Assembly: GCF_902713615.1 (NCBI RefSeq)
Contig: NC_052162.1
Coordinates: forward strand, 130,534,653 to 130,598,652
Source of the DNA: Scyliorhinus canicula
Lineage: Eukaryota
Direction: 5' to 3'
DNA length: 64,000 nt
Part shown: piece by piece, positions 1,227 through 62,726 of the stretch
Layout: each line of letters starts with the position of its first letter
Numbering within the stretch: position 1 is the stretch's first letter
Notes under the pieces: model-generated
Databases searched by the model: none
What the model saw: the letters and a program-made list of their open reading frames with translations, nothing else
Told to the model about the DNA's origin: nothing
Program-made: the position numbers and the translations under genes

Positions 1227-1360
1227 TGTTACAAGACCCTGGACTAGTGGGCGGTCAATTCCAGCCCCACCTGACTCGAAGTCACAACACAAGTGAATTA
1301 ACCAATAATACTTAGTTGGCCCATGGCTGCCCAATAATTACAGTAATGAGGTTTGTAAAC

Positions 1361-3166
1361 GACTTCCGGTGACGGCGGGCAGGAGGCAGCTGCGCGTTGG
1401 AGGGCTCCCGTTCGAGAACGGCATTGTCGAGGATTGACGCCCGGTCCTAGGGGCAGCGAAGGCGGTGAAGGCCAGGAGGAAGCACAGGGAAGGGATATGT
1501 CGAGGTCCAGTAAGAAAACGGCTGTGAAAACATCTGAAAATTCATCAGGGAGTAGAAAGGTCACCGTGGGGTCACCAAGGAAAATGGAGGCTGGAGCATC
1601 AGGGGAGGCCGCATTGCTTACGGCTGAAGAAATAACCAAGGTAATGGCTGCGGAATTCGAAAGGCAGTTTACAAAATACATGGAGACAATGAGGAAGGAG
1701 ATGAGGGAGGTTTTGAGTGTGCTGGTGGAGGATGCGATTTCCCCGGTGACGACGGAGTTGGCGAGCGCAGTGGCGGAGGTGCGGGAGCAAGGGGAGGCGC
1801 TGAAGGAAGTGGAGGAGACATTATCGCAGCACGGTGATCAACTTACGTCAATGGGGAAGGAGATGCGGAAGGCGATGGAGATTAATAAGGATCTGCGAGG
1901 AAAAATGGAAGACCTGGAAAACAGATCCAGGCGACAGAATTTGAGGATTGTGGGGCTGCCTGAAGGAGTTGAAGGGCCGAGGCCGACTGAGTATTTTGCT
2001 GCGATGCTGGCGAAACTATTGGGGGAGGGGGAGGATCCCTCCCGACATGAGCTGGATCGGGCTCATCGGTCGCAGAGGCCTGTACCAAAGGCGAGTGAGC
2101 CGCCAAGGGTAGTGACTTTGTGCTTCCGTAGGTACAGTGTGAAGGAGAAGGTCCTGTGCTGGGCCAAGCAGAAGCGGGTGGTGCAGTGGGCTGGAGCCGG
2201 TATACGTCTATACCAGGACTTTACGGTGGAGCTGGCGAGGAGGCGGGCTGCTTTCAACCGGGTGAAGAGGGCACTGTACATTAGCAAGGTGCAATGCGGC
2301 ATTGTATATCCAGCGAAGCTGAGGGTGATTTACAAGCTCATGGACTTTTATTTTGGAACGGCGGAGGCAGCGGAGGAGTTTGTGAAGGCAGAAGGACAGT
2401 GGCAGAACTGAGAAATGGCCATGTGCCAACGTAACCTCATGACTATACTTTCTTTTTATTTGTCTGTTTGTTTCACTGCGTGCGGGCTAAAGGAGCCGGT
2501 GTTGTATATATTTGGACAAGGGAAGTGATGGGACTTTCACTCAAAGTGAGGGCTCTTTGGGGTGTAGGTGGATATGTGGGGTTTGTGCGCTAAAAGGGGA
2601 TTTTTGAGCTTTCCTAGGGTCGGGCAAGGGACATGGCGGGGGCCTCCATGCTGGCCGGTCTAAGCCGGCCAGTGAACGGGAGTGAAGTGGGGGGAGGGGC
2701 TGCGGCCATCGGAGCCTAGCAGAACAGGGTCCGAGTGGTCTAGCCGGGATGGAAAGTTGGGGGGAAGGAACCGAGGTTAGGGGGAAGGAGTTTTACAAGA
2801 GGCAGTGGACGGGAGGAGTTGGGGAGGAGGGGTTTACAACTCTTGGGTATCATGTACAGCACTCTTTCAGAGGTTGGACGGTATTGTGTTTGTGTGTGTG
2901 AGGGGGGGGGGGGGGGTGGACTCTATGGTGACCATGGGCAGTCCCAGACTCCTTTTTTCTTTTTCTCCTTTGTTTTTTGTTTCCACCGTGCTTTATTGGA
3001 TGCATATATTGACAGGTGGACCGTTGTTTGGGGTGGTGGGAGGATGGGATCGTTGTTATTGTTAAGGGGATTGATTTTGTATTTGTTACCGTTTACTGTC
3101 TGTGTGTGGGGTGTAAATTTTGGAAGGAAAATGTGAAAATGGAGAATAAAAACATTTATTTAAAAA
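1361..3166 (+). mobile_element. ORF1-only L1-derived element (HAL1-like), full length with TSD
   Basis: Starts GACTTCCGG, encodes an intact L1 ORF1, has ~750 bp with no ORF2, then AATAAA (3145) and a short A tail. Flanked by a perfect 16-bp TSD AATGAGGTTTGTAAAC (1345-1360, 3167-3182). Confidence 0.85.
1497..2411 (+). CDS. LINE-1 ORF1p (coiled coil, RRM, CTD), 304 aa from first ATG
   Basis: Heptad-rich N-half, then L1 ORF1 motifs LENRSRRQNLRIVGLPEG, LDRAHRS, YQDFT, YPAKL. The ORF-track start at 1434 is TTG; first ATG is 1497. Confidence 0.92.
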   Translation: MSRSSKKTAVKTSENSSGSRKVTVGSPRKMEAGASGEAALLTAEEITKVMAAEFERQFTKYMETMRKEMREVLSVLVEDAISPVTTELASAVAEVREQGEALKEVEETLSQHGDQLTSMGKEMRKAMEINKDLRGKMEDLENRSRRQNLRIVGLPEGVEGPRPTEYFAAMLAKLLGEGEDPSRHELDRAHRSQRPVPKASEPPRVVTLCFRRYSVKEKVLCWAKQKRVVQWAGAGIRLYQDFTVELARRRAAFNRVKRALYISKVQCGIVYPAKLRVIYKLMDFYFGTAEAAEEFVKAEGQWQN

Positions 3167-3657
3167 AATGAGGTTTGTAAACATAATTATTGTTTATTGA
3201 TAACAAGAACTACGAAGAAATATGCAGCAAACACAACTGGTTAACTATTATGTAATTTCTAATTCCCCACTTTAATTTTCCCCCCACTCTCTACATACAC
3301 ACACACACGACAGACAAACACAGAGGAGAAGAAAGGGGTAAAATAAAATCATAAATGGAAGGGAAAAAAGTCTTTGTTTCAGATGGTGGTTTCCAGCATC
3401 TTACTTCTCTTCAAACTTTGCTTTCAGTTTGTGGTTTTTATTGTGGATTCATCCAGGTCTCTGTCGTTTCAGAATACAGCACGCACAGGCCTTTCCCGAG
3501 AGAGAGGATGAGGGAGGGAGAGGGAGAGGAAGAGAGAGATGGCAAGGGAGAGAGAAGGAGGATCCTGCGTCTTTGTTTACAGCTGTAATGGTTTTCCTGT
3601 AGATAAATTCATTCAGGTTCTCTGCAAGTTCAGAAATACAGCACTCACAGCATTTGT

Positions 3658-4004
3658 GGGCAGCAGGGTAGCATGGTGGTTAGCATAAATGCTTCACAGC
3701 TCCAGGGTCCCAGGTTCAATTCCCGGCTGGGTCACTGTCTGTGTGGAGTCTGCACGTCCTCCCCCTGTGTGCGTGGGTTTCCTCCGGGTGCTCCGGTTTC
3801 CTCCCACAGTCCAAAGATGTGCGGGTTAGGTGGATTGGCCATGCTAAATTGCCCGTAGTGTCCTAATAAAAAAGTAAGGTTAAGGGGGGGGTTGTTGGGT
3901 TACGGGTATAGGGTGGATACGTGGGTTTGAGTAGGGTGATCATGGCTCGGCACAACATTGAGGGCCGAAGGGCCTGTTCTGTGCTGTACTGTTCTATGTT
4001 CTAT
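3658..4004 (+). mobile_element. HE1/V-SINE-type tRNA-derived SINE, CR1-like (TTCTATG)n tail
   Basis: Pol III A/B-box-like head, core GTGGGTTTCCTCCGGGTGCTCCGGTTTCCTCCCACAGTCCAAAGA. Near-identical to 41494-41844. Confidence 0.88.
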
Positions 4005-5040: not shown

Positions 5041-6197
5041 GGCAGCACAGCTTCACAGCTCCAGGGTCTCGGGTTCGATTCTCACTTGGGTGACTGTCTG
5101 CGCAGAGTCTGCAAGTTCTCCCGGTGTCTGCATGGGTTTCTTCCGACTGCTCCTGTTTCCTCCTGGGGCTCCAGTTTCCTCCCACAGTCGAAAGATGTGC
5201 CGACCAGGCTAAATTGCCCTTAGTGTCCAAAAAGGTTAGGTGGGGTTGCTGGGTTGCAGGGATGGGGTGGAATTGTGGGGTTAAGTAGGGTGCTCTTTCC
5301 AAGGGTCGATGCAGACTCGATGGGTCAAATGGCCTCCTTCTGAACTGGAGATTCTATAATGCATATATTTACTGATGAAACCCGGAGCCAAATTAAACAT
5401 TATTACTTTAGTTTTCTTCTTTTTAAAAAAAATTTAGAGTACCCAATTCATTTTTTCCAATTAAGGGACAATTTAGCGTGGCCAATCCGCCTACCCTGCG
5501 CATCTTGGATTGTGGGGGTGAAACCCATGCAAACATGGGGAGAATGTGCAAACTCCACACGGACAGTGACCCAGAGCCGGCATCGAACCTGGAACCTCGG
5601 CGCCGTGAGGCAGCAATGCTAACCATTGCGTCACCGTGCTGCCCATTAAATGTTATCACTGATTAAAGTTTATTGATGAAGCAGAAATGGATAAAAACAC
5701 AGAAAGTTATTTCAGGATCAAAGACAACCAGTGTAAAATGATACGCACAATGTTCTGGATCCAAATGGTTTCTCTTCAGCTGCTTGTTGTCCTGTCCCTG
5801 TGACTCTCCACTTTGGACTTGTTGACTGAACACTGAGGGTCACATCATTATCAACACAACATTATCAACAGGGCAGCACCGTAGCATTGTTGGTTAGCAC
5901 AAATGCTTCACAGCTCCAGGGTCCCAGGTTCGATTCCGGCTTGGGTCACTGTCTGTGCGGAGTCTGCACATCCTCCCCGTGTGTGCGTGGGTTTCCTCCC
6001 ACAGTCCAAAGATGTGCAGGTTAGGTGGATTGGCCAGGATAAATTGCCCTTAGGGTCCAAATTGCCCTTAGTGTTGGGTGGGGTTACTGGGTTATGGGGA
6101 TAGGGTGGAGGTGTTGACCTTGGGTAGGGTGCTCTTTCCAAGAGCCGGTGCAGACTCGATGGGCCGAATGGCCTCCTTCTGCACTGTAAATTCTATG
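5041..6197. mobile_element. Three SINEs: 5041-5358(+), short A-tailed form 5418-5645(-), 5871-6197(+)
   Basis: All share the V-SINE core and Pol III-type head. Confidence 0.85.
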
Positions 6198-7074
6198 AAA
6201 ACACTGATCTTGTGCCCCAATGGATCGGAGGCTAATTTCCCAGCCAGTCCCCAGCACTGTCCTGTCTATTAGTGTGACACCCACAGCAGTTTAACTGGGA
6301 CGGAGGCACCGTTATTCTCAGCTATATTCTGCCCTCAGCTCCATCGCCTGGATGTCATTGACTTGAGGAAGAGAGAGAGAGACAGAAAGCTCAAATGGGA
6401 ACTTGAGATAAGTGACTCTAAACCAACACTTCAACATTTGTCAGTCAAATACATGTTATTTATACGGTGGGTTTTATTGTTATATTTCGGCAATGGGGGC
6501 TAAGGGTGGGGACTTTAAAATGGGTAAAAGAAAATTGCAGGGCCATGGAATTAACCGGTTAGCTCTTCCAAAGGGCCAGCTTGTGCATGATGGGCCAAAT
6601 GATCTCCACCTTTGTTCTATCAGCCTCGTGTGTGTTTAAAGAGAGGGAGTGATCGTCAATTGTGGGTGAAATATTAAATAATGCAGTATTTTCTCTGTAA
6701 GTTTAGTTTAACACTTCAATCTCCCCTGAACCTTGTCTGAAGCGGCCGATGGAGTTTAATACAGAGAAGTGTGAGGGGATGTGATTGAGCAGAAGGGATA
6801 GGGAGATGTAATAGAGACTGAACGACAATAGTTCTGAAGAATGAGCAGGGGCTGAGGGACGCGGGGTTAATGTTTAAGAGGCGGCAGAACCATTGAGAGA
6901 AACATCAGCAAAGCAAATAGGATCTGACTCCGAAGGCTTCCTGCATCGAGAGAGGAGGCAGACACAGCATCAGCTTGCAGGTGTTTCCCATAGATTGTTC
7001 TTCCGCTGGAATAGGTCACTAGCCTGACGTCAGAGGCGATTGCTTGAGGGGCAGCAATCCACATCAAGCATGTT

Positions 7075-7604: not shown

Positions 7605-7949
7605 ATAGAACATAGAACAGTACAGCACAGAACATGCCCTTCGGCCCTCGATGTTGTGCCGAGCAATGATCACCCTACTCAAACCCATGTATCCACCCTA
7701 TATCCGTAACCCAACAACCCCCCCTTAACCTTACTTTTTTTTAGGACACTACGGGCAATTTATCATGGCCAATCCACCTAACCTGCACATCTTTGGACTG
7801 TGGGAGGAAACCGGAGCACCCGGAGGAAACCCACACACACACGGGGAGGACGTGCAGACTCCGCACAGACAGTGACCCAGCCGGGAATCGAACCTGGGAC
7901 TCTGGAGCTGTGAAGCATTTATGCTAACCACCATGCTACCATGCTGCCC
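7605..7949 (-). mobile_element. HE1/V-SINE-type SINE
   Basis: Reverse complement of the 3658-4004 subfamily. Confidence 0.88.
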
Positions 7950-7977
7950 ATGTCCATGTCTGACAGGCAAACTATAG

Positions 7978-9505: not shown

Positions 9506-10393
9506 TCAATCCTGGATGTGATTAACAGACGCAATATCTGCAGACTCCGACCCCTTGTGAACTCGCTGGTGTCTCAAAAGGTTGGACAATCGAGTGAATC
9601 CTTTCCCACAGGTAGAGCAGGTGAACGGTCTCTCCCCAGTGTGAAGTCGCTGATGTGTCAGCAGGTTGGATGACTGAGTGAATCCCTTGCCACACACAGA
9701 GCAGGTGAACGGCCTTTCTCCAGTGTGAACTCGCTGATGTGCCAGCAGAGTGAACGAATCACTGAATCCCTTGCCACAAGCAGAGCACGTAAACGACCTC
9801 TCCCCGGTGTGAACTTGCCGGTGTCGCAACAGGTTGGTTGAGTGACTGAATCCCTTCCCACAAACAGAACAGGTGAACCGCCTCTCACCAGTGTGAACTT
9901 GCTGGTGAGTCACTAGATTGGATGACTGAGTGAATCCCTTTCCACATACACAGCAGATAAACGGTCTCTCCAAAGTATGAACTCGCTGGTGTGAATGCAG
10001 GTTCGATGACTGTGCAAAACCTTTCCCACACATAGAGCAGATGAATGGTTTCTTCCCGCTGTGAACTCTCTCATGTGTCAGCAGGGTGGAAGAATCACTG
10101 AATCTTTTCCCACACTCCAAGCAGATGAACGGTTTCTCTCCGGTGTGAACTCGCTGGTGAATCAGCAGGTGGGATAACTGAGTGAATCCTTTCGCACACT
10201 CAGAGCAGGTGAACGGTCTCTCACCAGTGTGAACACGTTGGTGTGTTTGCAGGTTCGCTAACCGTATGAATCCCTTCCCGCAGTTAGGGCAGGTGAACGG
10301 CCTCTCCCCAGTGTGACTGCGTCGATGCGTTTCCAGCACAGATGGACAACGGAATCCCTTCCCGCAGTCACCACATTTCCACGGTTTCTCCAT
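9506..10393 (-). CDS. C2H2 zinc-finger protein ZNF-A, 10 fingers, 295 aa
   Basis: Starts [14 protein letters not shown] in ACCATGG context. Ten CxxC-x12-HxxxH fingers with TGERP-type linkers; tail SVNHIQD; shared splice acceptor at ~10760. Confidence 0.92.
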
Positions 10394-31108: not shown

Positions 31109-34100
31109 AACTGGGGAACATCGTTGACTGGGTATTGTGCAATGCAAAATGAATAATTGCCGATTTAATTGTGCGAGAACCCTTGGCAATGAGCGAACAT
31201 AATATGTTTGAATTATTTATCAAGTTGATGAGTGACGTAGTTGATTCTGAGACTCGCTTCCCAAATCTAAATAAAGGAAACTACGATGATACGAGTCACA
31301 AGTTGGCTATGATGGATTGGGAAACATTATTTGAAGGGACACCGACACCGGCAATGGCAAACATTGAAGGAGCACTGGGGTAAACTACGGCAATTGTTTA
31401 TTCCTGTCTGACGCAAAACTAAAACTGAAAACGTGGCCAATCCATGGCGTACTTGAGAATTTAGAGATGGTATTAGATTCGGGGAAGAAACATCTCCATT
31501 CGCCAGAAAACATCACAGCCATGAGAATTGGGAGCATTTCAGCAAAGGAGTACCCAGGAATTGATTAAGAAGGGGAAAAGAGAGGGCAGCACGGTGGCTC
31601 AGTGGTTAGCACTGGGACTATGATGCTGAAGACCCAGGTTTGAATCCCGGCCCTGGGTCACGGTCCGTGTGGAGTTAGCACATTCTCCCCGTGTTTACGT
31701 GGGTTTTAACCCCACATCCCAAAGATGTGCAGGGGAGGTGGATTGGTCACTAAATTGCCCCTTAACTGGAAAAAAACATAATTGAGTACTCTAAATTTAT
31801 AACAACAAAATAATTTTTTTTTAAAGAGGAAAATAGAGTACAAAAGTAAGCTTGCGGGCAATATAACAACTCCCTAGAAGTATCTATAGGTATGTGAAGA
31901 GAAAAGGATTGGTGAAGACAGTCAGAAACTGGGGAATTTATAATGGGGAACAAAGAAATGGTTCACCAATTAAATACATACTTTGGTTCTGTCTTCATAA
32001 AGAAGGACACAGATGACAGACCAGAAATGTTGGGGAACACAGAGTTAAGTGAGAGGGAGGAACTGAAGGGGATCAATATTGGTAGAGAAATGGTGTTGGG
32101 GAAAGTGATGGGATTGAAGGCTCTGAAATCCCCAGGCCTGCTAATCTGCATCCCAAAGTACTTAAAGAACTGGCCTTAGAAATAGTGGATGTATTGGTGG
32201 TCATCTTCTAGGATTCTATAAACTCTGTTCCTGCAGATTGGAGGGTAGATAATGTAACCCCACTATTTATAAGGGGGGGGGGGGGTGGAGGTTAGAGATA
32301 GACCAGTCAGCCTGGCGTCGGTAGTGGGGAAAATTCTAGAATCCATTAGGGGGGAAATTCTAGAATCCATTATCAAAGATTTTATAGCAGAGAACTTAGA
32401 AATCGTGGCGGGATTGGATAGAGTCAGCATGGATTTATCAAAGGCAAATCATGTTTGATAAATGATTGGAATTCTTCAAGTAAAGTTGATGAGGGGGGAG
32501 CCAGTAGGTGTGGTTTACTTGGAGTTTCAGAAGGCTTAAGACCCACATAAGAGATTAGCGTGTAAGATTAAAACGGATGGAATTGGGGGTAGTGCATTGA
32601 GATGGATAGAAAACTGGTTGGCAGACAGGAAACAAAGGGTAAGAATAAACAGGTCTTCTTCCAAATAGATTAGGAATAAATGCATCATTTTTCTAATTGG
32701 GTACCGCAGGGATCGGTGCTAGGACCTCAGCTATTCACAAGAAATATTCATGATTTCAATTTGGGAACTAAATGTAATATCTCTAAATTTGCAGATGACA
32801 CAAAGCTGGGTGGGCGGAGGGGGGGGGTGGGGTTGGTGGTGAGCCTTGAGGAGGATGCAGAGATGCTTCAGTGTGATTTGGACAGGCTGAGTGAGTGGGC
32901 AAATGCACGGCAGATGCAGCATATTGTGGATAAATGTGAAGTTATCCACTTTGGTGGCAAAGACAAGAAGGTAGATTATTATCTGAATGGCTATAAATTA
33001 AGAGAAGAATATGCAACGAGACCTGGTGTCCTCGAACACCTGCAGCTAAGCATGCAGGTACGACAGGTGATAAAGAAGGCAAATGGTATTCTGGCCTTTA
33101 CAGTGAGAGGAGTCGAGGATTGGAGCAGGGACGCCTACTTCTACAGGACCTTGGTGAGGCCACATCTGGAATATTGTGTGCCGTTTGATCTCCTCATCTG
33201 AGGAAGGATGTTCCTGCTCTCCAAACTGATTCCTGGGATAGCAGGACTAATGTATGAGGAGATATTTAGTCGCCTTGAATTATATTCGCTGGAGTTCAGA
33301 ATAATGATTGGCACATCTCAGAGAAACCTATAAATTCTAACAAGACTAGACTCTGGATCTGTACTCAATGGTGTTTAGAAGGATGAGGGGAGACCTTATT
33401 GAAACTAGATAGAGTGGGCGTGAAGAAGATGTCTCCATGAGTAGGAGAGAGAAGAACCCAATGGCACAGCCTCAGACTGAAGGGACGATCCTTGAAAACT
33501 CAGATATTGAGGAATTTCTTCAACCAGAGGGTGGTGAGTATGTGGAACTCATTGCTGAAGAAGGCTGTGTGTCTTCAAGACAAAGGTAGATAGGTTCTTG
33601 ATTAATAAGTGGATCAGGGATTACGAGGAGAATACAGGAGATTGGGGATGAGAAACATATCAGCCATGATCGAATGGCGGAGATGACCCAATGGGTAAAT
33701 GGCCTAATTCTGCCCCTATATCTTATGTTCTTAGACATGGTCAGTGCAGGAAGGATGTTGCCAATGGTGGGAGAGTCCAGAACCAAGGGTCACAGTCTAA
33801 GGATACAGAGTAGACCATTTAGGACAGATGAGGAGAAATTTCTTCACCCAGAGTACTGCACGCCTGTGGAATTCGCTACCACAGGAAGCAGTTGAGGCTA
33901 AAACATTGTGTGTGTTCAAGAAGGAGTTAGATGTAGCTCTTGCGGGTTAAGGGGATCCAAGGCTATGGGTGGAAGACGGGAATGGGTTACTGAGTTGGAT
34001 GATCAGCCATGATTGTAATGGATGGCAGAGCAGGCTCGAAGGGCTGAATGGCCTCCTCCTGCTCCTTTTTTCCATGTTTGGTTCATTGATGTCCTTTCTC

Positions 34101-34879
34101 AAAGGAAATCTACCATCTTTTCCTGGCTTGGCCCACATGTGGGTGACTCTTAAATGCCTGAGCAACTCATTTCAATAAATGCTGGTCCAGTGAGCGATGA
34201 CCACATTCCATGAGTCAATTTTTTAAGAAGTCCGCCAGAGGGAGCGGGACCAGATTTCTTTGTGTGTCAGGCACAAAACACACTTCCAGAAGAGACCTGG
34301 CCAACTAATGGGCAGCCGAATGCGCTGCCGGGGAGGGTGGGTACTGAGGGTGAGGGCTGGCGCTTCACATGTGCTCCCTCAGGGAGAACAACCGCTGCAG
34401 AGCTTTCGCAAGGAGCTGCTGACCTGTGAAAAATAAATAGCGATAGGGTAACTATTCAGTGTGTTTATAAGCAGCATATTCAAACACAATTGCAAACACT
34501 TCCAGGCAGCCACCCATCCGAGCAACATAAAACTCTGACCTCTTATCACCGAAGCACAAGATAAAACCATTTGTATTCAGGCTTCCTCCAGGTAAAGGCC
34601 AATAATACGTCATCTTTCAAGTTATTTTTCTGTCTGTTAAGTAGGTTTGAATCCTGACATTTTTCTGCTCAACCACTCCAAGCTTCCCACCATTCAGAAT
34701 GGAGTTCTGTCTCCTAACTTTTGGTCCAATAACTTAACCTGTCACAATGCCCCTTTGTAACTTTCTTCAATCTTCTGACCCCATCTAGATTATTTATCTC
34801 ACCACCTCTTGGTGTCATCGGCAAACCTAACTCTATGGCTTGTTTAGTCTTTCACCCAACTTGTTAATAAATAGTCATG

Positions 34880-36097
34880 AGGCACATCATCTCCACACTC
34901 CCAGAATGCCTAGATCCACTGCAATTCGCAAAGCGCCACAACCAGTTCACAGCAGATGCCATCTCCCAGGCCCTACACTCATCCCTGGAGCCTTCCACAC
35001 CATAATCCCAGCCAATCTCATACCAAAGTTTCAAAACCTAGGACTTGGTGCCTCACTCTGCAACTGGATCCTCGACTTTCTGAGCCATAGACCACAATCA
35101 GTAAGGATAAACAACAACACCTCCTCCACAATGGTCCTCAATAACAGGGCCCCGCAAGGCTGCGTACTTAGTCCCCTACTATACTCCCTGTACACACGCA
35201 CATGACTGTGTGGAAAATTTGACTCCAACTCCATCTACAAGTTTGTTGACAACACAACCGTAGTGGGTCGGATCTCGAATTCCCTCCTGAGGACGGAGAT
35301 AGAGGACCTAGTGGAGTGGTGTAATGACAATAATCTCTCCCTCAATACCAGCAAAACTAAAGAGCTGGTCATTGACTTCAGGAAGCAAAGTATCGTGCAC
35401 ACCCCTGTCTTCATCAATGGGGCCGAGGTGGAGATGGTTGACAGCTTCAAATTCTTAGGTGTGCATTTCACCAAAAATCTGTCCTGCCCCACCCACGATG
35501 CCTCCACCACCAGGAAAGCACAACAGCGCCTATACTGCCTCAGGAAACTATGGAAATTCGGCATGTTCACATTGACTCTTACCAACTTTTACAGATGCAC
35601 CATAGAAAGCATCCTATCTGGCTGCATCACAGCCTGGTATGGCAATTGCTTGCCCCAGGACCGCAAGAAACTTCAGAGAGTCGTGAACACCGCCCAGTCC
35701 ATCACACGAACCTGCCTCCCATCCATTGACTCCATCTACACCTCCCGCTGCCTGGGGAAAGCGGGCAGCATAATCAAAGACCCCTCCGACCCAGCTTACT
35801 CGCTCTTCCAACTTCTTCCATCGGGCAGGAGATACAAAAGTCTAACGCACTAACAAATTCAAAAATTTCCCCGCTGTTACCAGACTCCTAGATGACCCTC
35901 TTATGGACTGATCTGATTAATACTACACTCCTGTCTGCTTCACCCGATGCCCGTGTCTATGTATTTACATTGTGTACTTGTGTTGCCCTATTACATATTT
36001 TCTTTTCATGTACTAAATTATCTGTTTGCGCTGTGCGCAGAAAAATACTTTTCACTGTACCTCAGTACACGTGACAATAAATAAATCCAATCCAATC
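34880..36097 (+). mobile_element. Rex1/Babar-type LINE, 5'-truncated RT and 3' end
   Basis: [63 protein letters not shown]; ends AATAAA and (TCCAA)n. Confidence 0.85.
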
Positions 36098-36378
36098 TGA
36101 GACCCCAGTACAGATCCCTCGCCGAAGGTTGGGGTGAGGGTGTCTGAGACCCCAGTACAGATCCCTGGCTGAAGGCTGGGCAGAGGGTGTCTGAGACCCC
36201 AGTACAGATCCCTGGCTGAAGACTGGGGTGAGGGTGTTTGAGACCCCAGTCCAGATCCCTGGCTGAAGGCTAGGGTGAGGGTGTCTGAGTCCCCAGTACA
36301 GATCCCTGGCTGAAGGCTGGGGTGAGGGTGTCTGAGACCCCAGTACAGATCCCTGGCTGAAGGCTGGGATGAGGGGGC
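36098..36378. repeat. Tandem repeat, 47-bp unit, 6 copies
   Basis: TGAGACCCCAGTACAGATCCCTGGCTGAAGGCTGGGGTGAGGGTGTC repeated. Confidence 0.95.
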
Positions 36379-36471
36379 TCCGTTAGTCACATTCTGCTCT
36401 CCATTGGTAACTATTATCCCGGCCTATTGCCTCCTTCCTCTTATTTAGTTATTGTTGAACTTCGCTGACAG

Positions 36472-37779
36472 ATGATGGATATCACTGGGCCATTAGAGAG
36501 TCTCGATCACCAGACCAGCCTTGTTAATACCTTCTCTGCCCTGTTCAACAAGGAGGATTTCAGCGACATCAAACTGATTGTGAACAAAAAGCTCACACTG
36601 AACGCCCACAAGTTCATCCTGGTCGTGCGTAGCGACGTCTTCAGGACCCTGCTGGACACTGAGCGTTGGTCGGATGCTAAAGACCAGACTGTCCACCTCA
36701 CTGAGGAAGAGGAGTGCCTGGATCACTTCCAGGATTTCCTGAGGTATCTCTACAGTGGGAGTGTCACCCTCAGCACTGTCAATGTGCTTCCCCTTCACCT
36801 TCTGTCAGAAAAGTACAACGTCCAGGAGCTGAGAGAAAGCTGCCAACAGTTTATGTTGGCCAATGTGGCTGCCCCGGGCTCCTCCAACTGCGCCATCACA
36901 TGGCAGAGATATGCCAAGCTGACTGGCCTAACCCAACTGGAAGAGAAATGCCTCAGTTTCACAACCTGGAACATTGACACCATCATAGAGTCCCCAGACT
37001 GGATATCGATGGAACCTCACCAACTCTCTGCTCTCCTCCAAAGATCTGACCTGGTGGTGGAAGATGAAGTGGTCCTTTTCCAAGCCCTGGTGAGTTGGCT
37101 GTCCCTGCATCCTGCCCATACTGAGGAAATGCTGCAACACATTCACTATCCTATGATGCCCCCAGAGAAACTGTTTGATCTCCAAGCCCCAGGGGCAATA
37201 TCTACCTACCTGCACCAGGAGAGCTTGCTGGTCTACCAAGTGCATCTTTTGCCCATGGATGCCATCAGCCAGCGCCATGATATCACCACCATCCCATTTA
37301 CCATGAGACTATATACGTCAGGACGTTGTAGCCACCTCTGGGACATCACAGGATATCAGCAAATGAGTAAAATTTTGATGGCGACATCGTTCTCAACCAC
37401 CCATTTCAAACTGACGACTCAATGGCATGTTACCTTTTTCCCAAAAGGTCAAAGTATCTCAGCTAAGCGGCGAAGGAACAATTATATCTATCGCATGGGT
37501 TTTGATGAAGTTTGTCAAGACAATGACTTTTCAACTCGCTCTGCCTCGGTGAACAACCGTGATCCGGCTGGCAAGACACATTCTCACAAACTGAGCATTC
37601 TGATTTATCGATGTGACAACAGTGTGTGGTTTGTGGGTGATGTGACGGCCCTTGAGGTCCCACACTCGGGCAATGCCGAGTTTGCAGATCTAATCCCCTT
37701 GTTGGAGCGGGACAAGTACATCAGCAATGACACAATGAAGCTGCACCTCATCGGAGAGACCACCTGGGAGAAATGTTAG
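36472..37779 (+). CDS. BTB/POZ-BACK protein (BTBD17-like) with MATH/TRAF-like C-terminus, single coding exon, 435 aa
   Basis: BTB: FSDIKLIV, AHKFILVVRSDVF, FLRYLYSG, LSEKYNVQELRESC. BACK: WISME..LLQRSDLVVEDEVVLFQALVSWL, IHYPMMPPEKL. Acceptor-like CTGACAG immediately before the ATG; AATAAA at ~37944. Confidence 0.9.
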   Translation: MMDITGPLESLDHQTSLVNTFSALFNKEDFSDIKLIVNKKLTLNAHKFILVVRSDVFRTLLDTERWSDAKDQTVHLTEEEECLDHFQDFLRYLYSGSVTLSTVNVLPLHLLSEKYNVQELRESCQQFMLANVAAPGSSNCAITWQRYAKLTGLTQLEEKCLSFTTWNIDTIIESPDWISMEPHQLSALLQRSDLVVEDEVVLFQALVSWLSLHPAHTEEMLQHIHYPMMPPEKLFDLQAPGAISTYLHQESLLVYQVHLLPMDAISQRHDITTIPFTMRLYTSGRCSHLWDITGYQQMSKILMATSFSTTHFKLTTQWHVTFFPKGQSISAKRRRNNYIYRMGFDEVCQDNDFSTRSASVNNRDPAGKTHSHKLSILIYRCDNSVWFVGDVTALEVPHSGNAEFADLIPLLERDKYISNDTMKLHLIGETTWEKC

Positions 37780-38023
37780 ATGATGAAGATGAAATTCATT
37801 TGAAGTCATGAAGAGTTTTCATAGAGTGTGATAGATTATTGATTTATTTGATGTCTCTAGGTACTGATTGAGTACATAGCTAAAGAATAGAATTATTCAA
37901 AAGGCCATAACCGCAAAAAGATAGTAATTGTTTCAGATGATGAATAAACTATTGAACTTTAGGGTCATGTCTGCAGAAATACAGACATTGTTTCAATGAA
38001 TGTCTCACTTATGTATCAGGGAA

Positions 38024-38870
38024 TGTTTCATAAAATGAAAAGACTATTGCATTCAGTGCACTTGGTAATAAAAATGCATCAATTAATTAGTTACATTAAG
38101 GTCTGTGGCCAGCAGTGGTGTAGGAAATTTATTCTCATGAGACTGGCCTGGACTAACTTTGATAGGCATCAGTAAATCTTTTTTTAAAATAAATTTAGAG
38201 TACCCAATTCATTTTTTCCAATTAAGGGGCAATTTAGCGTGGCCAAGCCACCTAACCTGCACATCTTTGGGTTGTGGGGGCGAAACCCACGCAAACACGG
38301 GGAGAATGTGCAAACTCCACACGGACAGTGATCCAGAGCCGGGATCGAATCTGGGACCTCAGCGCCGTGAGGCAGCAGGGCTAACCCACTGCGCCACCGT
38401 GCTGCCCTGACATCAGTAAATCTTAAGTAACGACCAATGGTTGATTAATAAATCATGCTCTAAGTAACAAACATCTTGAACAAATCAGGATGTCTCAGCT
38501 GAGAATTAGAAGCCAATGAGAGTAAATGAGGGATTAGACCATAGAAAAGGATTCTCTTAAAAGTAGGAGCTCGTGGGCGTGGTTTTGTTCCTGAATTTCT
38601 GCCTTCCTAAATTTTTGAATTATCTATTTGTTTGTGATTTCTTCATGCTTTTATGCTTAATGTTTTTTGTTTAACCATGTCTTTGACCCTTGTACGTATT
38701 GTTTGATATTTCATTTCTAAATTTTGATTCAGTTCTTTTCAAGTGCATGCAAGTGAATAATTATCAATAAAGTTGTACTTTGGGCACCTCCAATCAACCG
38801 GACTATCAACTCTTATTAGAAGATAAAATAAGAGATCCCATAGAGTGGTTGGGGAGAAATTGTTCCAACT
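38024..38870 (+). mobile_element. Solo-LTR-like repeat containing a short V-SINE (38179-38407,-)
   Basis: Homologous to 60702-61330. The SINE is flanked by TSD CATCAGTAAATCTT (38167, 38411). Confidence 0.65.
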
Positions 38871-38920
38871 GGCAAGAACCAGAGCATGGACAGATTTAAG
38901 ATAATCTGCAAACATTTTTA

Positions 38921-39552
38921 TCATACAATTCCTACAGTGCAGAAGGAAGCCATTTGGCCCATCGAGTCTGCACCAACCCTCCGAAAGAGCACTCTACCTA
39001 GGCCCAATCCCCCACCTTATCCCACCTAACTTGCGTAAGGGTGGCACAGTAACACAGTGGTTAGCACAGTTGCTTCACAACACCTGGGTCCCAGGTTCAA
39101 TTCCCGGCTTGGGTCACCGTTTGTACGGAGCCTCCACATTCTCCCACATGCTGCACATGCTGCGTGGGTTTTCTCCGGTTGCTCCGGTTTCCTCCCACAA
39201 GTCCCGAAAGCATGCTGTTAGGTGAATTGGACATTCTGAATTCTCCCTCTCTGTACCCGAACAGGCGCCGGAATGTGGTGTCTAGGGGATTTTCACAGTA
39301 ACTTCATTGCAGTGTTAATGTAAGCCCACTTGTGACAATAATAAAGATTATTATTATTATGTTTCAACACTAAGAGGCAAATTAGCATGGCCAATCCACC
39401 TGCACATTTTTGGAATGTGGAAGGGATCCGGAGCACCCGGACAAAACTCGCACAGACACAGGGAGAACATACAAACTCCACACAGTCACCGAAGGCCAGA
39501 ATTGAACCCAGGTCCCTGATGCTGTGAGACAACAGTGCTAACCACTGTGCCC
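38921..39552. mobile_element. V-SINE(-) interrupted by V-SINE with T2 tail (39038-39359,+)
   Basis: Halves at 38921-39030 and 39367-39552 rejoin; the insert ends AATAAAGATTATTATTATT. Confidence 0.8.
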
Positions 39553-39633
39553 TTGTGCAACATGTCTCTGCTGATAGTAAACTTGGACCTTTTAAGTTTA
39601 AATTAATTAGTAATTTCTCTGTTTAATTTACGC

Positions 39634-40620
39634 CATGATGTGGAGATGCCGGCGTTGGACTGGGCTGGGCTCAGTAAGAAGCCTGAAAATATCAGGTTAA
39701 AGTCCAACAGGTTTGTTTCAAACACTAGCTTTCGCAGCGCAGCTCCTTCCTCAGGCGAATGAAGAGATGGGTTCCACAACTACATATATAGACAAAGTCA
39801 ATGATGCAAGATAATACTTTGAATGTGAGTCTTTGCAGGAATAAAGTCTTCAGAGGTCCAGACGGAGCGACTGGAGAGAGGGATATTCACAGGTTAAAGA
39901 GGTGTGAATTGTCTCAAGCTCGGATAGTTGGTAGGATTTTACAACCCCCGGCCAGATGATGTGGGGTGAATATAATGAGACATGAATCCAAGGTCCCGGT
40001 TGAGGCCGTACTCATGTGCGGAACTTGGCTATCAGTTTTTGCTTGGCGATTCTGTGTTGTCGCGCGTCCTGAAGGCCGCCTTAGAGAACGCTTACCCGAA
40101 GATCAGAAGCTGAATGCCCTTGACTGCTGAAGTGTTCCCCGACTGGAACGGAACATTCCTGTCTGCCGATTTTTGCGCGATGTCTGTTCATCCATTGTCA
40201 CAGCATCTACGTGGTCTCGCCAATGCAGAACCTCATGATGCTCCACTTCTCTAGCTTCCACCTGAAACACATTAAAGAAGCCATCCCCTATGGACAAGCC
40301 CTCCGTATACACAGGATCTGCTCAGACGAGGAGGAATGTAACAGACATCCTTCAGGATGCACAACAACGCAGAATCGCCGAGCAGAAACGTATAGCCAGG
40401 TTCCGCAAGCATGAGTACGCCCTCAACCGGGACCTGGGATTCATGTCTCATTACATTCACCCCCCACCATCTGGCCAGGGTTTGCAAAGTCCTACCAACT
40501 GTCCTGGCTTGAGACAATTCACACCTCTTTAACCTGTGATTATCACTCTCTCCAGTCGCTCCGCCTGGACCTGTAAAGACTTAATTACCTGCAAAGACTC
40601 GCATTCGCTCGCATTCAAAG
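39634..40620. mobile_element. Penelope-like element relic with inverted segments
   Basis: pLTR and endonuclease C-terminus on minus (39634-40220). Plus strand encodes FSSFHLKHIKEAIPYGQALRIHRICSDEE (RT thumb) and RRIAEQKRIARF..LNRDLG. Hammerhead-like motif at 39723-39757(-). Confidence 0.82.
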
Positions 40621-40689
40621 TTTCAAGTCTTCTTATTTTATGCCAGACCACATCTATGTTTACATTAGTTATACTCTGGCCTGTGTTTT

Positions 40690-42830
40690 ATAGCCCCACC
40701 ACAGCATGTCTTAAACCAACCATATAAATCCACCCAAGAAAGAAACACCCTTTCCCCAGCAATAAGAACTAGCCCCCCCCCCCCTCTCCTAGCAGCTGAT
40801 GGTGACTAGTTCTTTAAAGTAAGAAATTAATAGCTGCCACCTCGGGTAGGACCCCTCAATCAACCCCCTGGCAGTGTACTTGACCTTCTCCAGATGTAAA
40901 AATTCCATGAAATCACCCAAGCAGACCGAGGCACTGGGCGGATTAGGAGATCTCCATCCCAGCACAACTCACCTCTGAGCTATCAATAAGACAAAGACGT
41001 GGACATCCACCTTCACCCCCGGCAAGTCCAATACCCCGAAAATGGCCACTGAAAGACAAGGCTCCAGATCAGTTAGGAATTGCTAACACGGTGCGCAAGA
41101 AGGAGACCTAAAAACGTACCAGCTGGGGACATGACCAGAACATAGAAGTGTGGCTAGCTGGCCCTCGGGAACTGCACTCCTGAAACCACTCATCCTGGCC
41201 TTAGTTTGGAGAGCTCTAAGGGGGCAGCACAGTGGTGCAGTGGGTTAGCACTGCTGCCTCACGGCACCATGTTTACGTGGGTTTTGCCCCCACAACCCAA
41301 AGATGTGCTGGGTAGGTGGATTGGCCACGCTAAATTGCCCCTTCATTGGAAAAAAAATTAATTGGATACTCTAAAATTTATGTATCAAAAAGGTGAGCCC
41401 TATGTACCACCTTGAGCTGAATTTGACTGAGTTCGTGCACAGGTTGTGGAGTTTATCCTGCAAAGGGCCTCATGCCAAATATCCTCATCTAAAGGGGCAG
41501 CAGGGTAGCATGGTGGTTAGCATAAATGCTTCACAGCTCCAGGGTCCCAGGTTCGATTCCCGGCTGGGTCACTGTCTGTGTGGAGTCTGCACGTCCTCCC
41601 CCTGTGTGCGTGGGTTTCCTCCGGGTGCTCCGGTTTCCTCCCACAGTCCAAAGATGTGCGGGTTAGGTGGATTGGCCATGATAAATTGCCCGTAGTGTCC
41701 TAATAAAAGTAAGGTTAAGGGGGGGGGTTGTTGGGTTACGGGTATAGGGTGGATACGTGGGTTGAGTAGGGTGATCATGGCTCGGCACAACATTGAGGGC
41801 CGAAGGGCCTGTTCTGTGCTGTACTGTTCTATGTTCTATGTTCTAAAGTAGGTCCAAGTTCCCCCTCCCATTTTTCTCGCACCCCATGCAGTGGGGCTAG
41901 CTCCCTAGACAGGATTTGCCCATAGATACCTGAAATGCCTCCCTACTTCCACACCCACCACGAGACCCTATTAGTGATAGGATTCTTTTCAACAAGGAGG
42001 GTTGCGGAGCCGAGGGAAATGTCGGAGAAGTCTTTCGGACAAAACCATGTATTTGGAGCTAATGGAACGAGTCCGTCCTGGAAAGTTGAAACTTCATCGA
42101 GAGCTCCACCAAACTACCAAACCATTCCTCCACAAACATCCCCAAACCTCTCAAGGCCCCTTCCCTCCCACACGTTGAACGTTGCATCTAGACTTGATGT
42201 TACTGATGGGGCTAGCAATGATATGGAGCCCAATTTATAATACTGCCTAAATTGCCTCCATATCCTGAGAATGGACACCACCACCAGGTTCGAAGAGCAC
42301 CTCACGGGAGAGAAAGGGAGTGAGGCCATTGCCAAAGCCCTTAAACTAGAGCCTCCACAAGAGCTCACCTTCATCTGTCCCCATATAGAGCCCGGCTCCC
42401 CCATCCACTCCAGCACCTTATCAATGTTGGCCACCCATTAACCAAGGGCAACTTGGATAATGCTAGACTCCCTGACTGCCGCTCCCTCGGAAGGAAAGTC
42501 CTACGGATTCTTGGGGTCTTCCCCGCCCAAATGAAGGAGGCAAATAACTTCTTAATCCTATCAGAAAAAGATTTAGGAACCAAAATAGGAAGACACTGGA
42601 AAATAAATAAAAACCTTGGGAGGAGAGTCTGGATCCTGCCCGCCAAGGACTGTGGGAAGTTATTCCACTTCTCCAAGTTGGATCTCACTCTGCTCACCAG
42701 ACCAGCATAATTTAATCTGTGCAGCGATGGACAATCATGGGCCTCCCGGATGCCCAGATAATGACAGCCATCTCTGGCAAGATGAAAAGATAATATCCCC
42801 AGATTGGCTCCCCTCTCCGGGGCCTAACTG
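40690..42830 (-). mobile_element. Degenerate L1 ORF2 3' portion with nested SINEs (41221-41391, 41494-41844)
   Basis: WNNFPQSLAGRIQTLLPRFLFIFQCLPI, FIWAGKTPRI, LRIWRQFRQYYKL. Confidence 0.8.
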
Positions 42831-48361: not shown

Positions 48362-49213
48362 TGTTCCGACATCCTGGGCCAGTGCGCAGTCAATTCCAGC
48401 CCCACTTGACCCAGAGTCACAACAAGAATTAACCAATAATTCTTCAAAAAATGCCCAAAGATTGTCCCTTGGTTATCCAATAATTACAGACACCAGGTTT
48501 GTGAGTTTAAACACAATTATTGTTTATTTATCACATGAACTACAATGAAATATGCAGCAAATACAACTGGTTAACTATGACCTAATTTCCCACTTTAACT
48601 TGCCCCCCCCCCCAACTCTTCAGACACGCACACATGACAGACAAACACAGAGGAGAAGAAAGGGGTAAAAAAAAACATACGTAAAAGGGAAAAAGAGTCT
48701 TTGTTTCAAATGGTGGTTTCCAGCACCTCTCACTCCTCTTCAAGCTTTGCTTTCAATTCGGGGGTTTTGTTACCGTAGATTCATTCAGATCTCTGTTGTT
48801 TCAGAAATACAACACTCACAACCTTTCTGGAGAGAGCGTCCCGGTTTTTGTTTGCAGCCTGTAATGGTTTTCCTGCTTCCAGGAGTCAAATTGAGCTCCT
48901 TGGGACTCTGAAACTCATTCTATTGGGGTAGGATCCAATCATCACCTGTTACCGGGCAGAGTACAGCATTTTGGCCAATTCATTGGCCACCAGCCAATCA
49001 ATCAAACCAAGTCCCACCCCATCTCTCTCTGGTGCCAAAAAGTCGGAGGCCTCCTGTACAAACAAGTAGACTGTTCTCTCCTGTAATTTCTGAATTCCTC
49101 ACTCTTCTCCTCTGCTTGACTTGGACACATCACCATTGATACATGCATCAGAAATGATAACGGCACAATAAAAGAAAGGGCAAATAAGGGAATAAACAAG
49201 ATGGACCTTTACA
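48362..49213 (-). mobile_element. Solo-LTR-like element, uninterrupted paralog of 1227-4290
   Basis: TG...CA ends; collinear with 1227-1360 plus 3183-4290. Confidence 0.7.
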
Positions 49214-61815: not shown

Positions 61816-62726
61816 GAGGTACGGTGCCAAAGAGGCCCGGCCAACCACGCCCACATGTTCTGGTCTTGCCCCAGACTTGTGGAGTACTGGACAGCCTTCT
61901 TCGAGGCTATGTCCAAAGTGGTGGGGGTGAGGGTGGAGCCATGCCCGATAGTGGCGGTCTTCGGGGTTTGAGACCCGCCAGATCTATTCCTGGGGAGGAG
62001 GGCGGACGCCCTTGCCTTTGCCTCCCTGATCACCCGCCGTAGAATCCTGTTTGGCTGGCGGTCAGCAGCACCGCCCAGAGCTGCAGACTGGCTGTCCGAC
62101 CTCTCGGAATCTCTCCAAATGGAGAAAATCAAATTCGCCATCCGAGGGTCAGACGACGGCTTCCACAGAACGTGGGAGCCATTCATGCAACTGTTCCGGG
62201 ACCTGTTTGTGGCCAACGAACAAGAGGAAGAATAGTCGGGTGGCCAAGAATCAGGGGAAAATGGACGGGAATCGAGGGAAGGTAGCCGGGGGGAGGGGGG
62301 GCTACGGGTTCGTTATGGGGGTTTGTCCTCATGGTTTTATGCTTATTTCTTTTTCTTGTTGATTTATTGTTTTTGTATTGGAGGGGAGGGGTTACTGTTT
62401 TTCTCTGTTGTGATAAAATTTGTTGTTGAAGACTTGAATAAAAATTATTCCAAAAAAAAGGAAGGACAAAGCCGCAAGCGACAGTCTGATGGCAAGCTAA
62501 GGCCCAAAACCAAATTGTAAATAAATGCCTATAAACATGTGCCTCGGCCATATTGGGGAATGTAAAATATGTATGCCGGTTAAAGGGGATGGCCACAGTT
62601 GTTATTATGAAGATGCTTACCTGTAAATATACATGTTAATTTTTGCGTGTTTTTTTTTCTAATAATTTGTAATTTGTTGGATATAAAATGTGAAAACTCA
62701 ATAAAAAACATTTACAAAAAAAAATA
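61816..62726 (+). mobile_element. 5'-truncated L1 (ORF2 Cys-rich end and 3' UTR) inserted in an S3 SINE
   Basis: RCQRGPANHAHMFWSCPRLVEYW; A tail; TSD AATGATGACC (61806-61815, 62727-62736). Confidence 0.85.

What the first reader, a model, noticed from the sequence alone, without database searches (positions are those of the whole stretch)
1345..3182. Complete ORF1-only L1 (half-L1/HAL1-like) retroposon with TSD and an in-window empty site
Seen: a 1.8-kb unit with 5' UTR, stop-free ORF1, G/T-rich 3' region, AATAAA and A tail, bounded by a perfect 16-bp TSD, with no ORF2. The host LTR paralog at ~48481-48530 reads straight across the site. Established: HAL1 elements encode ORF1p only, rely on ORF2p in trans, and are best documented in mammals. 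Inference: an independently derived, recently mobile shark half-L1 family whose ORF1p is kept under selection. Its terminal AATGTGAAAA..AATAAAAA.CATTT motif also ends the ORF2-bearing L1 at 62690-62726, a candidate helper.
Basis: partly seen in the sequence, partly recalled or inferred. Interest (0 to 1): 0.78.

Follow-up and report, generated by a model that had tools for sequence, protein, structure and literature searches.

The report
ORF1-only L1 retroposon in catshark
This is a complete 1.8-kb jumping element in the small-spotted catshark that kept the RNA-binding gene (ORF1) of an L1 element but lost the copying enzyme gene (ORF2); it belongs to a small family also present in a sister species, the shark counterpart of the mammalian "half-L1" (HAL1) parasites of L1.

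Summary
Window 1361-3166 (+) is a retroposon flanked by a perfect 16-bp target-site duplication (1345-1360 and 3167-3182). It has a 136-nt CpG-rich leader, an intact 304-codon ORF1 (1497-2411), AATAAA and a short A-run. There is no endonuclease or reverse transcriptase.

ORF1p is a complete L1-type protein (human ORF1p 2ykp: sequence E 1.7e-8, fold E 1e-10). The post-ORF1 region consists of the L1 inter-ORF spacer, about 55 nt of the ORF2 3' end, and the L1 3'UTR. ORF2 was excised at a short G-rich microhomology.

It is not a one-off. Two other ORF1-only copies, each with its own duplication and the same 5' end, lie in Scyliorhinus torazame; the window is S. canicula. One shares the same junction at 85% identity. 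ORF1 dN/dS is 0.41 (p = 6e-4). The ORF1 clade is sister to an autonomous catshark L1 ("L1-A").

The helper proposed at 62690-62726 is wrong: it is a 259-bp 3' fragment with no ORF2. Recent mobility and trans-mobilisation are inferred, not shown.

The scan noted at least nine similar ORF1-only elements elsewhere in this genome, all unchecked. Verdict: new member of a known kind (HAL1-like), apparently undescribed outside mammals.

The parts
1345..1360 (+). Left target-site duplication, AATGAGGTTTGTAAAC
   Evidence: Identical 16-mer at 3167-3182. Homology to the S. torazame copies L001 and L003 starts right after it.
1361..1496 (+). 5' UTR, presumed internal promoter. GC 0.66, CpG o/e 0.98
   Evidence: All three copies begin G(A/G)CTTCCGGTGACGGCGGGC immediately after their own TSDs. 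This is the fastest-evolving segment, 72.6% identical to L001. Promoter function is inferred.
1497..2411 (+). Intact ORF1, 304 aa plus stop: disordered N-terminus, about 100-residue coiled-coil helix, RRM, CTD
   Evidence: phmmer against PDB: human L1 ORF1p 2ykp, E 1.7e-8, covering residues 104-296. AlphaFold model with mean pLDDT 84.7. Foldseek top hit 2ykp_A, E 1e-10, TM 0.79. NLRIVGLPE, ARRR and YPAKL align to the human motifs. 87% aa identity to S. torazame P0001.
2412..2825 (+). Remnant of the L1 ORF1-ORF2 inter-ORF spacer
   Evidence: Aligns to the spacer between ORF1 and the ORF2 start in the autonomous L1-A copies L004 (about 5831-6245) and L002 (6064-6260).
2826..2834 (+). Deletion junction at the GGAGGGGTT microhomology
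   Evidence: In L1-A the same 6-9 nt occur twice: near the end of the spacer and about 20 codons before the ORF2 stop. The junction is shared by win and L001, which differ only in G-run length.
2826..2878 (+). Remnant of the last ~19 codons of ORF2
   Evidence: Nucleotide alignment to the L004 ORF2 end. Peptide GVYNSWVS..LFQ against L1-A GFYNSWALFIMHFQ.
2879..3161 (+). L1 3' UTR: G-run (~2901-2917), T-rich stretch, conserved terminal ~140 nt with AAAATGTGAAAA (3128-3139) and AATAAA (3145-3150)
   Evidence: 78.6-80.5% identical to the last ~140 nt of L1-A in L004 and L002. The 12-mer is invariant in 6 of 6 aligned 3' ends. It is absent from the L1-B 3' end.
3162..3166 (+). Short A-tail, 5-7 A (its boundary with the TSD is ambiguous)
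   Evidence: L001 has 9 A.
3167..3182 (+). Right target-site duplication
48362..48836 (+). Paralogous uninterrupted copy of the host repeat (a paralogous 'empty site')
   Evidence: The joined flanks align across it as a single HSP at 77.5% identity. Sequence read.
62468..62726 (+). Separate 5'-truncated L1-type 3' fragment carrying the same terminal motif. Not part of the element and not ORF2-bearing.
   Evidence: It follows another L1's own AATAAA and A-run at 62438-62467. Only about 60-140 nt resemble the element's 3' end, at 76%.

Best explanation
The element is a full-length member of a non-autonomous, ORF1-only derivative of a catshark L1 lineage. By architecture it is a 'half-L1' (HAL1-like) retroposon.

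Origin (inferred from homology). An L1 related to the L1-A lineage lost essentially all of ORF2 by a deletion between two copies of a short G-rich motif (GGAGGGGTT). One copy lies near the end of the ORF1-ORF2 spacer, the other about 20 codons before the ORF2 stop. What remained was the leader, ORF1, most of the spacer, about 55 nt of ORF2 and the 3'UTR.

Propagation.
- Shown: the same architecture occurs at independent sites, each with its own TSD and with the same 5' end.
- Inferred: the 1.8-kb RNA is transcribed from the internal CpG-rich leader and polyadenylated at its own AATAAA.
- Inferred: it is translated into a trimeric ORF1p that coats its own RNA.
- Inferred: it is reverse-transcribed at A-rich nicks (GT/AATG, TT/AATG, TC/AAAC) by ORF2p supplied in trans by an autonomous L1, giving 14-17-bp TSDs.

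Persistence. The junction is shared by copies in S. canicula and S. torazame. Their non-coding parts differ by about 11.5%, against 6.1% for orthologous DNA, while ORF1 stays open with dN/dS 0.41. This points to a self-propagating ORF1-only lineage at least as old as the species split, with selection acting on ORF1p.

The third copy, L003, has a different junction and an L1-A-like 3'UTR. This suggests 3'-end exchange by template switching at the G-run.
For: Anatomy:
- TSDs, ends and ORF were read directly.
- ORF1p is L1-type by sequence and by fold.
- There is no EN or RT.
- The spacer, the ORF2 3' remnant and the 3'UTR are homologous to autonomous L1-A in L002 and L004. In those loci an ORF2 with Exo_endo_phos and RVT_1 domains lies between the two parts.

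Family status:
- L001 (S. torazame) aligns to element positions 17-1825 at 85.4%. It has an intact 305-aa ORF1 and its own TSD, AATGTAATGACTTGTGC.
- L003 is ORF1-only with TSD AAACCATGAATATT.
- The window is S. canicula, assembly GCA_902713615.2.

Selection:
- dN/dS is 0.41, 0.41 and 0.59 for the three pairs. Binomial p is 6e-4 and 1.3e-3 for the two pairs that include the window copy.
- ORF1 is 92.3% identical between win and L001. The spacer is 88.4%, the 3'UTR 88.5% and the leader 72.6%.
- Orthologous S. canicula / S. torazame DNA differs by 6.1% over 8.6 kb.

Phylogeny: the ORF1-only clade (100/99) is sister to L1-A (100/99) within catshark L1s.

Lead only: at least nine other first-reader notes describe TSD-flanked ORF1-only L1s of 1.0-2.8 kb in this genome.
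Against: - Only three copies could be examined, and only one comes from this genome. Genome-wide copy number and age distribution are unknown.
- The direct autonomous parent was not found. That parent would have the same leader and an ORF1 at least 85% identical. L1-A ORF1 is only 58-60% identical in protein, so the junction microhomology is read from a relative and not from the parent.
- Pairwise dN/dS mixes selection on the active lineage with neutral decay after insertion. It would look the same if the copies were repeatedly spun off from a selected autonomous parent.
- No intact ORF2 lies in the window, and both L1-A copies seen are decayed. The helper is therefore unidentified.
- Transcription, translation and trans-mobilisation are all untested.
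Confidence: 0.8

Rival explanations
1. Recurrent by-product. ORF1-only copies are generated again and again from a still-autonomous parental L1, by splicing of the L1 RNA or by reverse-transcriptase template jumping between the G-rich tracts that bracket ORF2. They do not themselves found new copies. The conservation of ORF1 then reflects selection on the parent.
For: Two different junctions exist. Win and L001 retain an ORF2 remnant; L003 has none and joins directly to an L1-A-like 3'UTR. ORF2 loss or rearrangement at G-runs has therefore happened more than once. G-runs flank ORF2 in L1-A, L1-B and this element. Pairwise dN/dS cannot separate this reading from a self-sustaining lineage.
Against: Win and L001 share the same non-canonical junction and the same ORF2 remnant, yet differ by 11.5% in non-coding sequence and sit in different species. 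Imprecise template jumps would not land on the same spot repeatedly. In L1-A the junction has no consistent GT...AG pair. All three ORF1 sequences at least 85% identical to this one sit in ORF1-only elements. Both copies at about 60% identity sit in ORF2-bearing elements.
Confidence: 0.13
2. One-off internally deleted L1 copy, or a post-insertion genomic deletion of ORF2.
For: Only one copy lies in this 64-kb window.
Against: L001 has the same architecture and the same junction at another locus in another species, with a different TSD. L003 is a further independent ORF1-only insertion.
Confidence: 0.02
3. A host gene derived from L1 ORF1 (L1TD1-like domestication), or a processed pseudogene of such a gene.
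For: The ORF is intact, dN/dS is below 1, and NCBI annotates the S. torazame copies as 'uncharacterized protein'.
Against: The copy is flanked by TSDs and carries L1 spacer, ORF2-remnant and 3'UTR sequence. Copies lie at non-syntenic sites with different TSDs, and one has a frameshift.
Confidence: 0.02

Closest known systems
Mammalian HAL1 (half-L1) families. Smit 1999 and Bao & Jurka 2010, as summarised in PMC5753468.
   Same: A non-autonomous L1 derivative that encodes ORF1p only. It keeps L1-type 5' and 3' ends, inserts with TSDs, and is presumed to use ORF2p in trans. It is short enough to be copied full-length. HAL1s are reported to have arisen independently several times (PMC5753468).
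   Different: Its ancestry is separate. ORF1 nests among catshark L1s and is only about 25% identical to human ORF1p. It retains about 410 nt of inter-ORF spacer and about 55 nt of the ORF2 3' end. The A-tail is very short. It occurs in a cartilaginous fish. In the literature I could search, HAL1 is described only in mammals. Repbase and Dfam could not be queried.
Autonomous catshark L1 'L1-A' (S. torazame loci L002 and L004)
   Same: The ORF1 clades are sisters, at 58-60% aa identity. The inter-ORF spacer, the ORF2 C-terminal codons, the 3'UTR G-run and the terminal ~140 nt including AAAATGTGAAAA..AATAAA are homologous, the last at 78-80%.
   Different: L1-A carries an ORF2 of about 3.7 kb with EN and RT, decayed in both copies seen. 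Its leader is longer and barely alignable.
Spliced or internally deleted L1 insertions (for example SpIREs in human; from my own knowledge)
   Same: An L1-derived insertion that lacks internal sequence yet has normal ends and a TSD.
   Different: Those are dead-end copies with canonical splice junctions. Here the junction is a G-rich microhomology with no GT-AG in the nearest relative, and the form recurs across two species with ORF1 conserved.
L1TD1 (domesticated L1 ORF1 gene of mammals, PMC4161310)
   Same: An ORF1p-homologous protein with no ORF2.
   Different: L1TD1 is a single-copy syntenic host gene. This element is a TSD-flanked, multi-site retroposon.

Membership tests
HAL1-like (ORF1-only non-autonomous L1 derivative), defined by architecture | Encodes an intact L1-type ORF1p (coiled coil, RRM, CTD) | tested here: met
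   PDB 2ykp E 1.7e-8 over residues 104-296. The model has helix 43-144, RRM 148-240 and CTD 244-298, with pLDDT above 90. Foldseek 2ykp_A E 1e-10, TM 0.79. Pfam Transposase_22 is only sub-threshold, E 0.099.
HAL1-like (ORF1-only non-autonomous L1 derivative), defined by architecture | Lacks ORF2 (endonuclease and reverse transcriptase) | tested here: met
   No ORF other than ORF1 has a family hit. tblastn with catshark EN and RT proteins finds nothing except a remnant of about 19 codons from the C-terminus.
HAL1-like (ORF1-only non-autonomous L1 derivative), defined by architecture | L1-type retroposition hallmarks: TSD, 3' AATAAA and A-tail, A-rich nick site | tested here: met
   TSDs of 16, 17 and 14 bp in the three copies. 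Nick contexts are GT/AATG, TT/AATG and TC/AAAC.
HAL1-like (ORF1-only non-autonomous L1 derivative), defined by architecture | Multi-copy family of the same architecture, arising from independent insertions | tested here: met
   Three independent copies in two species, two with the same junction. Genome-wide copy number was not testable with these tools. At least nine unchecked scan notes of similar elements exist.
HAL1-like (ORF1-only non-autonomous L1 derivative), defined by architecture | ORF1 kept under purifying selection within the ORF1-only lineage | tested here: inconclusive
   Pairwise dN/dS is 0.41-0.59, with p = 6e-4 for win against L001. With three copies and no parent, selection on an autonomous parent cannot be excluded.
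HAL1-like (ORF1-only non-autonomous L1 derivative), defined by architecture | Mobilised by ORF2p supplied in trans | not testable with these tools
   Needs a retrotransposition assay or population data.
Mammalian HAL1 families (Repbase HAL1, HAL1b and others), defined by descent | Shares ancestry with mammalian L1/HAL1 lineages | tested here: not met
   ORF1 groups with catshark L1-A and L1-B at 100/99 support, apart from bony-fish, coelacanth and frog sequences. Identity to human ORF1p is about 25%. It is therefore HAL1-like by convergence and not a member by descent.
Autonomous LINE-1 | ORF2 with APE endonuclease and reverse transcriptase | tested here: not met
   The relatives L002 and L004 do have them.
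Spliced L1 insertion | Junction corresponds to canonical GT...AG splice sites in the parent | tested here: inconclusive
   No consistent GT-AG pair lies at the homologous positions of L1-A.

The most novel reading that the evidence does not exclude
An ORF1-only L1 lineage arose in the common ancestor of two catshark species and has replicated in both since then as a protein-coding parasite of autonomous L1s. It is a major share of young L1-type insertions in these genomes. It renews its 3' end by template switching onto the helper's RNA at the G-run that follows ORF2. Chimeras such as L003 would then be direct sequence records of which autonomous L1 served as helper.
Probability: 0.3. Interest if true: 0.65.

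Novelty: new member of a known kind. Interest (0 to 1): 0.5.

Why it matters
According to the literature I could search, HAL1 elements are the only known non-autonomous retroposons that keep a LINE protein gene, and they have been described only in mammals. An independently evolved counterpart in a cartilaginous fish, separated from mammals by more than 400 million years (my own knowledge), would have three consequences.

- It would show that "keep ORF1p, steal ORF2p" is a recurrent, stable strategy wherever L1s with a Type II ORF1 are active.
- It gives a natural test of what ORF1p contributes in cis.
- It matters for annotation. NCBI currently lists these ORFs in S. torazame as "uncharacterized protein" genes.

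The shared junction across two species and the 3'-end chimera offer a way to date the lineage and to identify its helper.

Tried and rejected
- Pfam at the default threshold gave nothing for ORF1p. At E up to 10 only a sub-threshold Transposase_22 hit appeared. The PDB sequence search and the fold search settled the identity.
- The exact-sequence look-up of the window ORF1p found no record.
- The search of the scan's notes by sequence was blank.
- I looked for an orthologous empty site in S. torazame. The BTBD17-like neighbour gave a collinear orthologous locus (L006), but it covers only window 33.5-48.7 kb. A word search with the nearest zinc-finger ORF (9506-10393) was swamped by paralogs and returned no ortholog. 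The insertion could therefore not be dated this way.
- A conserved 3' stem-loop as an RT-recognition signal was rejected. RNAalifold on six 3' ends predicts no pairs, so the shared motif is sequence-level and most simply a polyadenylation region. The perfect 14-nt inverted repeat in the L004 3'UTR is not conserved.
- I tested the lead from scan note s1-213855, inverted repeats bracketing ORF2. No spacer-to-3' arms were found in L1-A (L004) or in the element.
- The bacterial promoter/terminator scan is irrelevant to a vertebrate element.
- Bao & Jurka 2010 (PMC2923044) is not held. Its content is cited only through PMC5753468.
The consensus lines printed by the aligners were ignored.
Full report
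**1. What is at 1345-3182**

- The 16-mer AATGAGGTTTGTAAAC occurs at 1345-1360 and again at 3167-3182.
- The insert (1361-3166) starts GACTTCCGGTGACGG.
- It ends with AAAATGTGAAAA (3128-3139), AATAAA (3145-3150) and a 5-7-nt A-run.
- The only long ORF is 1497-2411, 304 codons.
- Within the 64-kb window the element is single-copy. BLASTN of the element and tblastn of ORF1p find only itself, plus a 59-nt match at 76% near 62668-62725.

With the insert removed, the joined flanks align as one HSP to 48362-48836 at 77.5%. A paralogous copy of the host repeat therefore spans the site uninterrupted. I did not test whether that repeat is an LTR. It has a single paralog in the window and none in the S. 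torazame loci I fetched.

**2. The protein**

Pfam at normal thresholds finds nothing. Transposase_22 appears only at E 0.099.
- phmmer against PDB sequences matches the human L1 ORF1p trimer 2ykp/2yko at E 1.7e-8 over residues 104-296. The NLR(I/L)(V/I)G(L/V)PE, ARR and YPAKL motifs align.
- An AlphaFold model built on 35 homologs has mean pLDDT 84.7. It shows a disordered N-terminus, one long helix (43-144), an RRM (148-240) and a CTD (244-298).
- Foldseek returns 2ykp_A first, at E 1e-10 and TM 0.79.

ORF1p is therefore a complete Type II L1 ORF1 protein.

**3. What follows ORF1**

There is no endonuclease or reverse transcriptase. The 755 nt after the stop codon are not a novel UTR. Comparison with two autonomous L1 copies from S. 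torazame makes this clear. I call that lineage L1-A. In locus L004 it is complete but decayed; in L002 a second L1, L1-B, is nested inside it.
- 2412 to about 2825 is homologous to the ~550-nt spacer between ORF1 and ORF2 of L1-A.
- 2826-2878 matches the last ~19 codons of L1-A ORF2 (GVYNSWVS..LFQ against GFYNSWALFIMHFQ).
- The rest is the L1 3'UTR. It has a G-run just after the ORF2 stop position, as in L1-A and L1-B. Its terminal ~140 nt are 78.6-80.5% identical to L1-A.

The junction falls in GGAGGGGTT. In L1-A this motif occurs both near the end of the spacer and about 20 codons before the ORF2 stop. I infer that ORF2 was removed by a microhomology-mediated deletion or a template jump. No consistent GT...AG pair fits the junction in L1-A, which argues against splicing. 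L1-A is a relative and not the parent, so this argument is not conclusive.

**4. Family or one-off?**

A word-based protein search found four S. torazame proteins, and I fetched their loci. The window itself is S. canicula, assembly GCA_902713615.2, record LR744046.1.
- **L001** aligns to element positions 17-1825 at 85.4%. It begins with the same GACTTCCGGTGACGG, has an intact 305-aa ORF1 (87% aa identity), and has the same junction and ORF2 remnant. It is flanked by a different 17-bp TSD in unrelated flanks.
- **L003** is a third TSD-flanked ORF1-only copy (TSD AAACCATGAATATT) with the same 5' end. It has a frameshift near the ORF1 N-terminus, an internal spacer deletion and a different junction. 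It has no ORF2 remnant, and its 3'UTR is 83% like L1-A but only 65-72% like the window copy and L001.

The nick contexts GT/AATG, TT/AATG and TC/AAAC fit an L1-type endonuclease. The consensus TT/AAAA is from my own knowledge.

The scan's notebook lists at least nine other first-reader notes of TSD-flanked ORF1-only L1s in this genome, 1.0-2.8 kb long, several of them 1.83-1.86 kb. These are unchecked leads. I could not read their sequences, so they do not count as evidence here.

**5. Selection and age**

Nei-Gojobori dN/dS:

| Pair | dS | dN | dN/dS | Binomial p (excess of synonymous changes) |
|---|---|---|---|---|
| win - L001 | 0.151 | 0.063 | 0.41 | 6e-4 |
| win - L003 | 0.149 | 0.061 | 0.41 | 1.3e-3 |
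| L001 - L003 | 0.095 | 0.056 | 0.59 | 0.07 |

Identity between win and L001 by segment:

| Segment | Identity |
|---|---|
| Leader | 72.6% |
| ORF1 | 92.3% |
| Spacer | 88.4% |
| 3'UTR | 88.5% |

For calibration, a collinear orthologous stretch (window 33.5-48.7 kb against S. torazame L006) differs by 6.1% over 8.6 kb. The two same-junction copies are thus about twice as diverged in non-coding sequence as the host genomes. The ORF1-only form is therefore at least about as old as the species split, or its lineage evolves faster than host DNA. ORF1 remained open in both.

An ML tree places the three ORF1-only sequences in one clade (100/99). That clade is sister to L1-A (100/99) inside a catshark L1 group, apart from teleost, coelacanth and frog ORF1s. 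The origin is therefore independent of mammalian HAL1. The two S. torazame copies group together (87/76).

Given that grouping, the L1-A-like 3' end of L003 is best read as a 3'-end replacement at the G-run within the S. torazame lineage. An independent deletion is the alternative.

Recent mobility of the window copy is plausible: the TSD is perfect, the ORF is intact, and leader CpG o/e is 0.98 against 0.48 for the window. It is not demonstrated. A 16-bp TSD would stay perfect with a probability of about 0.3 even if the insertion predated the species split (my estimate from the 6.1% divergence).

**6. The proposed helper**

That does not hold.
- The window does hold an L1 ORF2 C-terminal fragment at 61669 to about 62362, matching L1-B ORF2 residues 737-861 at 50%.
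- That fragment ends with its own AATAAA and A-run at 62438-62467.
- Bases 62468-62726 are a separate 259-nt 3'UTR fragment of a related lineage.
- No intact ORF2 exists anywhere in the window.
- The 12-mer AAAATGTGAAAA is invariant in all six 3' ends of the HAL-like, L1-A and 62726 group and absent from L1-B. No conserved RNA structure accompanies it. With the UGUAAA upstream and AAUAAA downstream, it most simply marks a polyadenylation region shared by one L1 subgroup.

The best helper candidate on present evidence is an active member of the L1-A group. This is an inference.

**7. Comparison with what is known**

HAL1 is defined as a non-autonomous L1 derivative that encodes only ORF1p. It is reported to have arisen several times within mammals (PMC5753468, citing Smit 1999 and Bao & Jurka 2010).
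- Full-text searches found no description of HAL1-like elements in sharks or other non-mammals.
- Bao & Jurka 2010 itself is not held, and Repbase and Dfam could not be queried.
- By architecture the element meets every testable HAL1 criterion. By descent it is not a member of the mammalian families.
- I rate it a new member of a known kind.

**8. Verdict**

It is wrong about the in-window helper and unproven on recency.
- Confidence in the HAL1-like family reading is 0.8.
- The main rival, at 0.13, is recurrent generation from an autonomous parent without self-propagation. Only a genome-wide census can exclude it.

Noticed in passing
window 3658-3866, 7709-7950, 41495-41736 and about 25 other sites: A SINE-like repeat of about 200-240 bp is very abundant in the window. 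It has roughly 28 copies at 69-98% identity, on both strands.
   Followed up: no
L002:4600-15540: A nested pair of L1s in S. torazame. The older L1-A is interrupted by a near-intact L1-B, which has a 281-aa ORF1 and an ORF2 in two overlapping frames of 543 and 864 aa, and ends at about 14308. The L1-A 3' part resumes near 15050.
   Followed up: partly
window 2901-2917; L004:9957-9985; L002:14060-14110: A long G-run lies immediately after the ORF2 stop in three different catshark L1 lineages. It is reminiscent of the G-rich tract of mammalian L1 3'UTRs. Both ORF1-only junctions fall in or beside G-runs.
   Followed up: partly
window 33565-48699 vs L006: This region is collinear and orthologous with S. 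torazame BFAA01001442.1, with 6.1% mismatches. About 3.1 kb (window 42849-45927) is present in S. canicula but absent from the S. torazame contig at L006:16159-16165.
   Followed up: partly
window 36472-37779: An intronless BTBD17-like gene (BTB, BACK and TRAF_BTBD17 domains) sits inside the zinc-finger cluster. It belongs to a multi-copy shark family, with paralogs at 76-82% identity in both Scyliorhinus species.
   Followed up: partly
L003:11083-11988 and L004:2051-3088: Both the L003 ORF1-only copy and the L004 L1-A copy in S. torazame also lie next to C2H2 zinc-finger arrays that are 70-77% identical to window 56000-56980. This may only reflect how large these clusters are.
   Followed up: no
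window 40795-42781 (-) and 32680-33198 / 35263-35853 (+): Further decayed LINE pieces. There is an L1 ORF2 RT and C-terminal fragment on the minus strand, and there are RVT_1 and ALKBH8_N-type hits on the plus strand.
   Followed up: no
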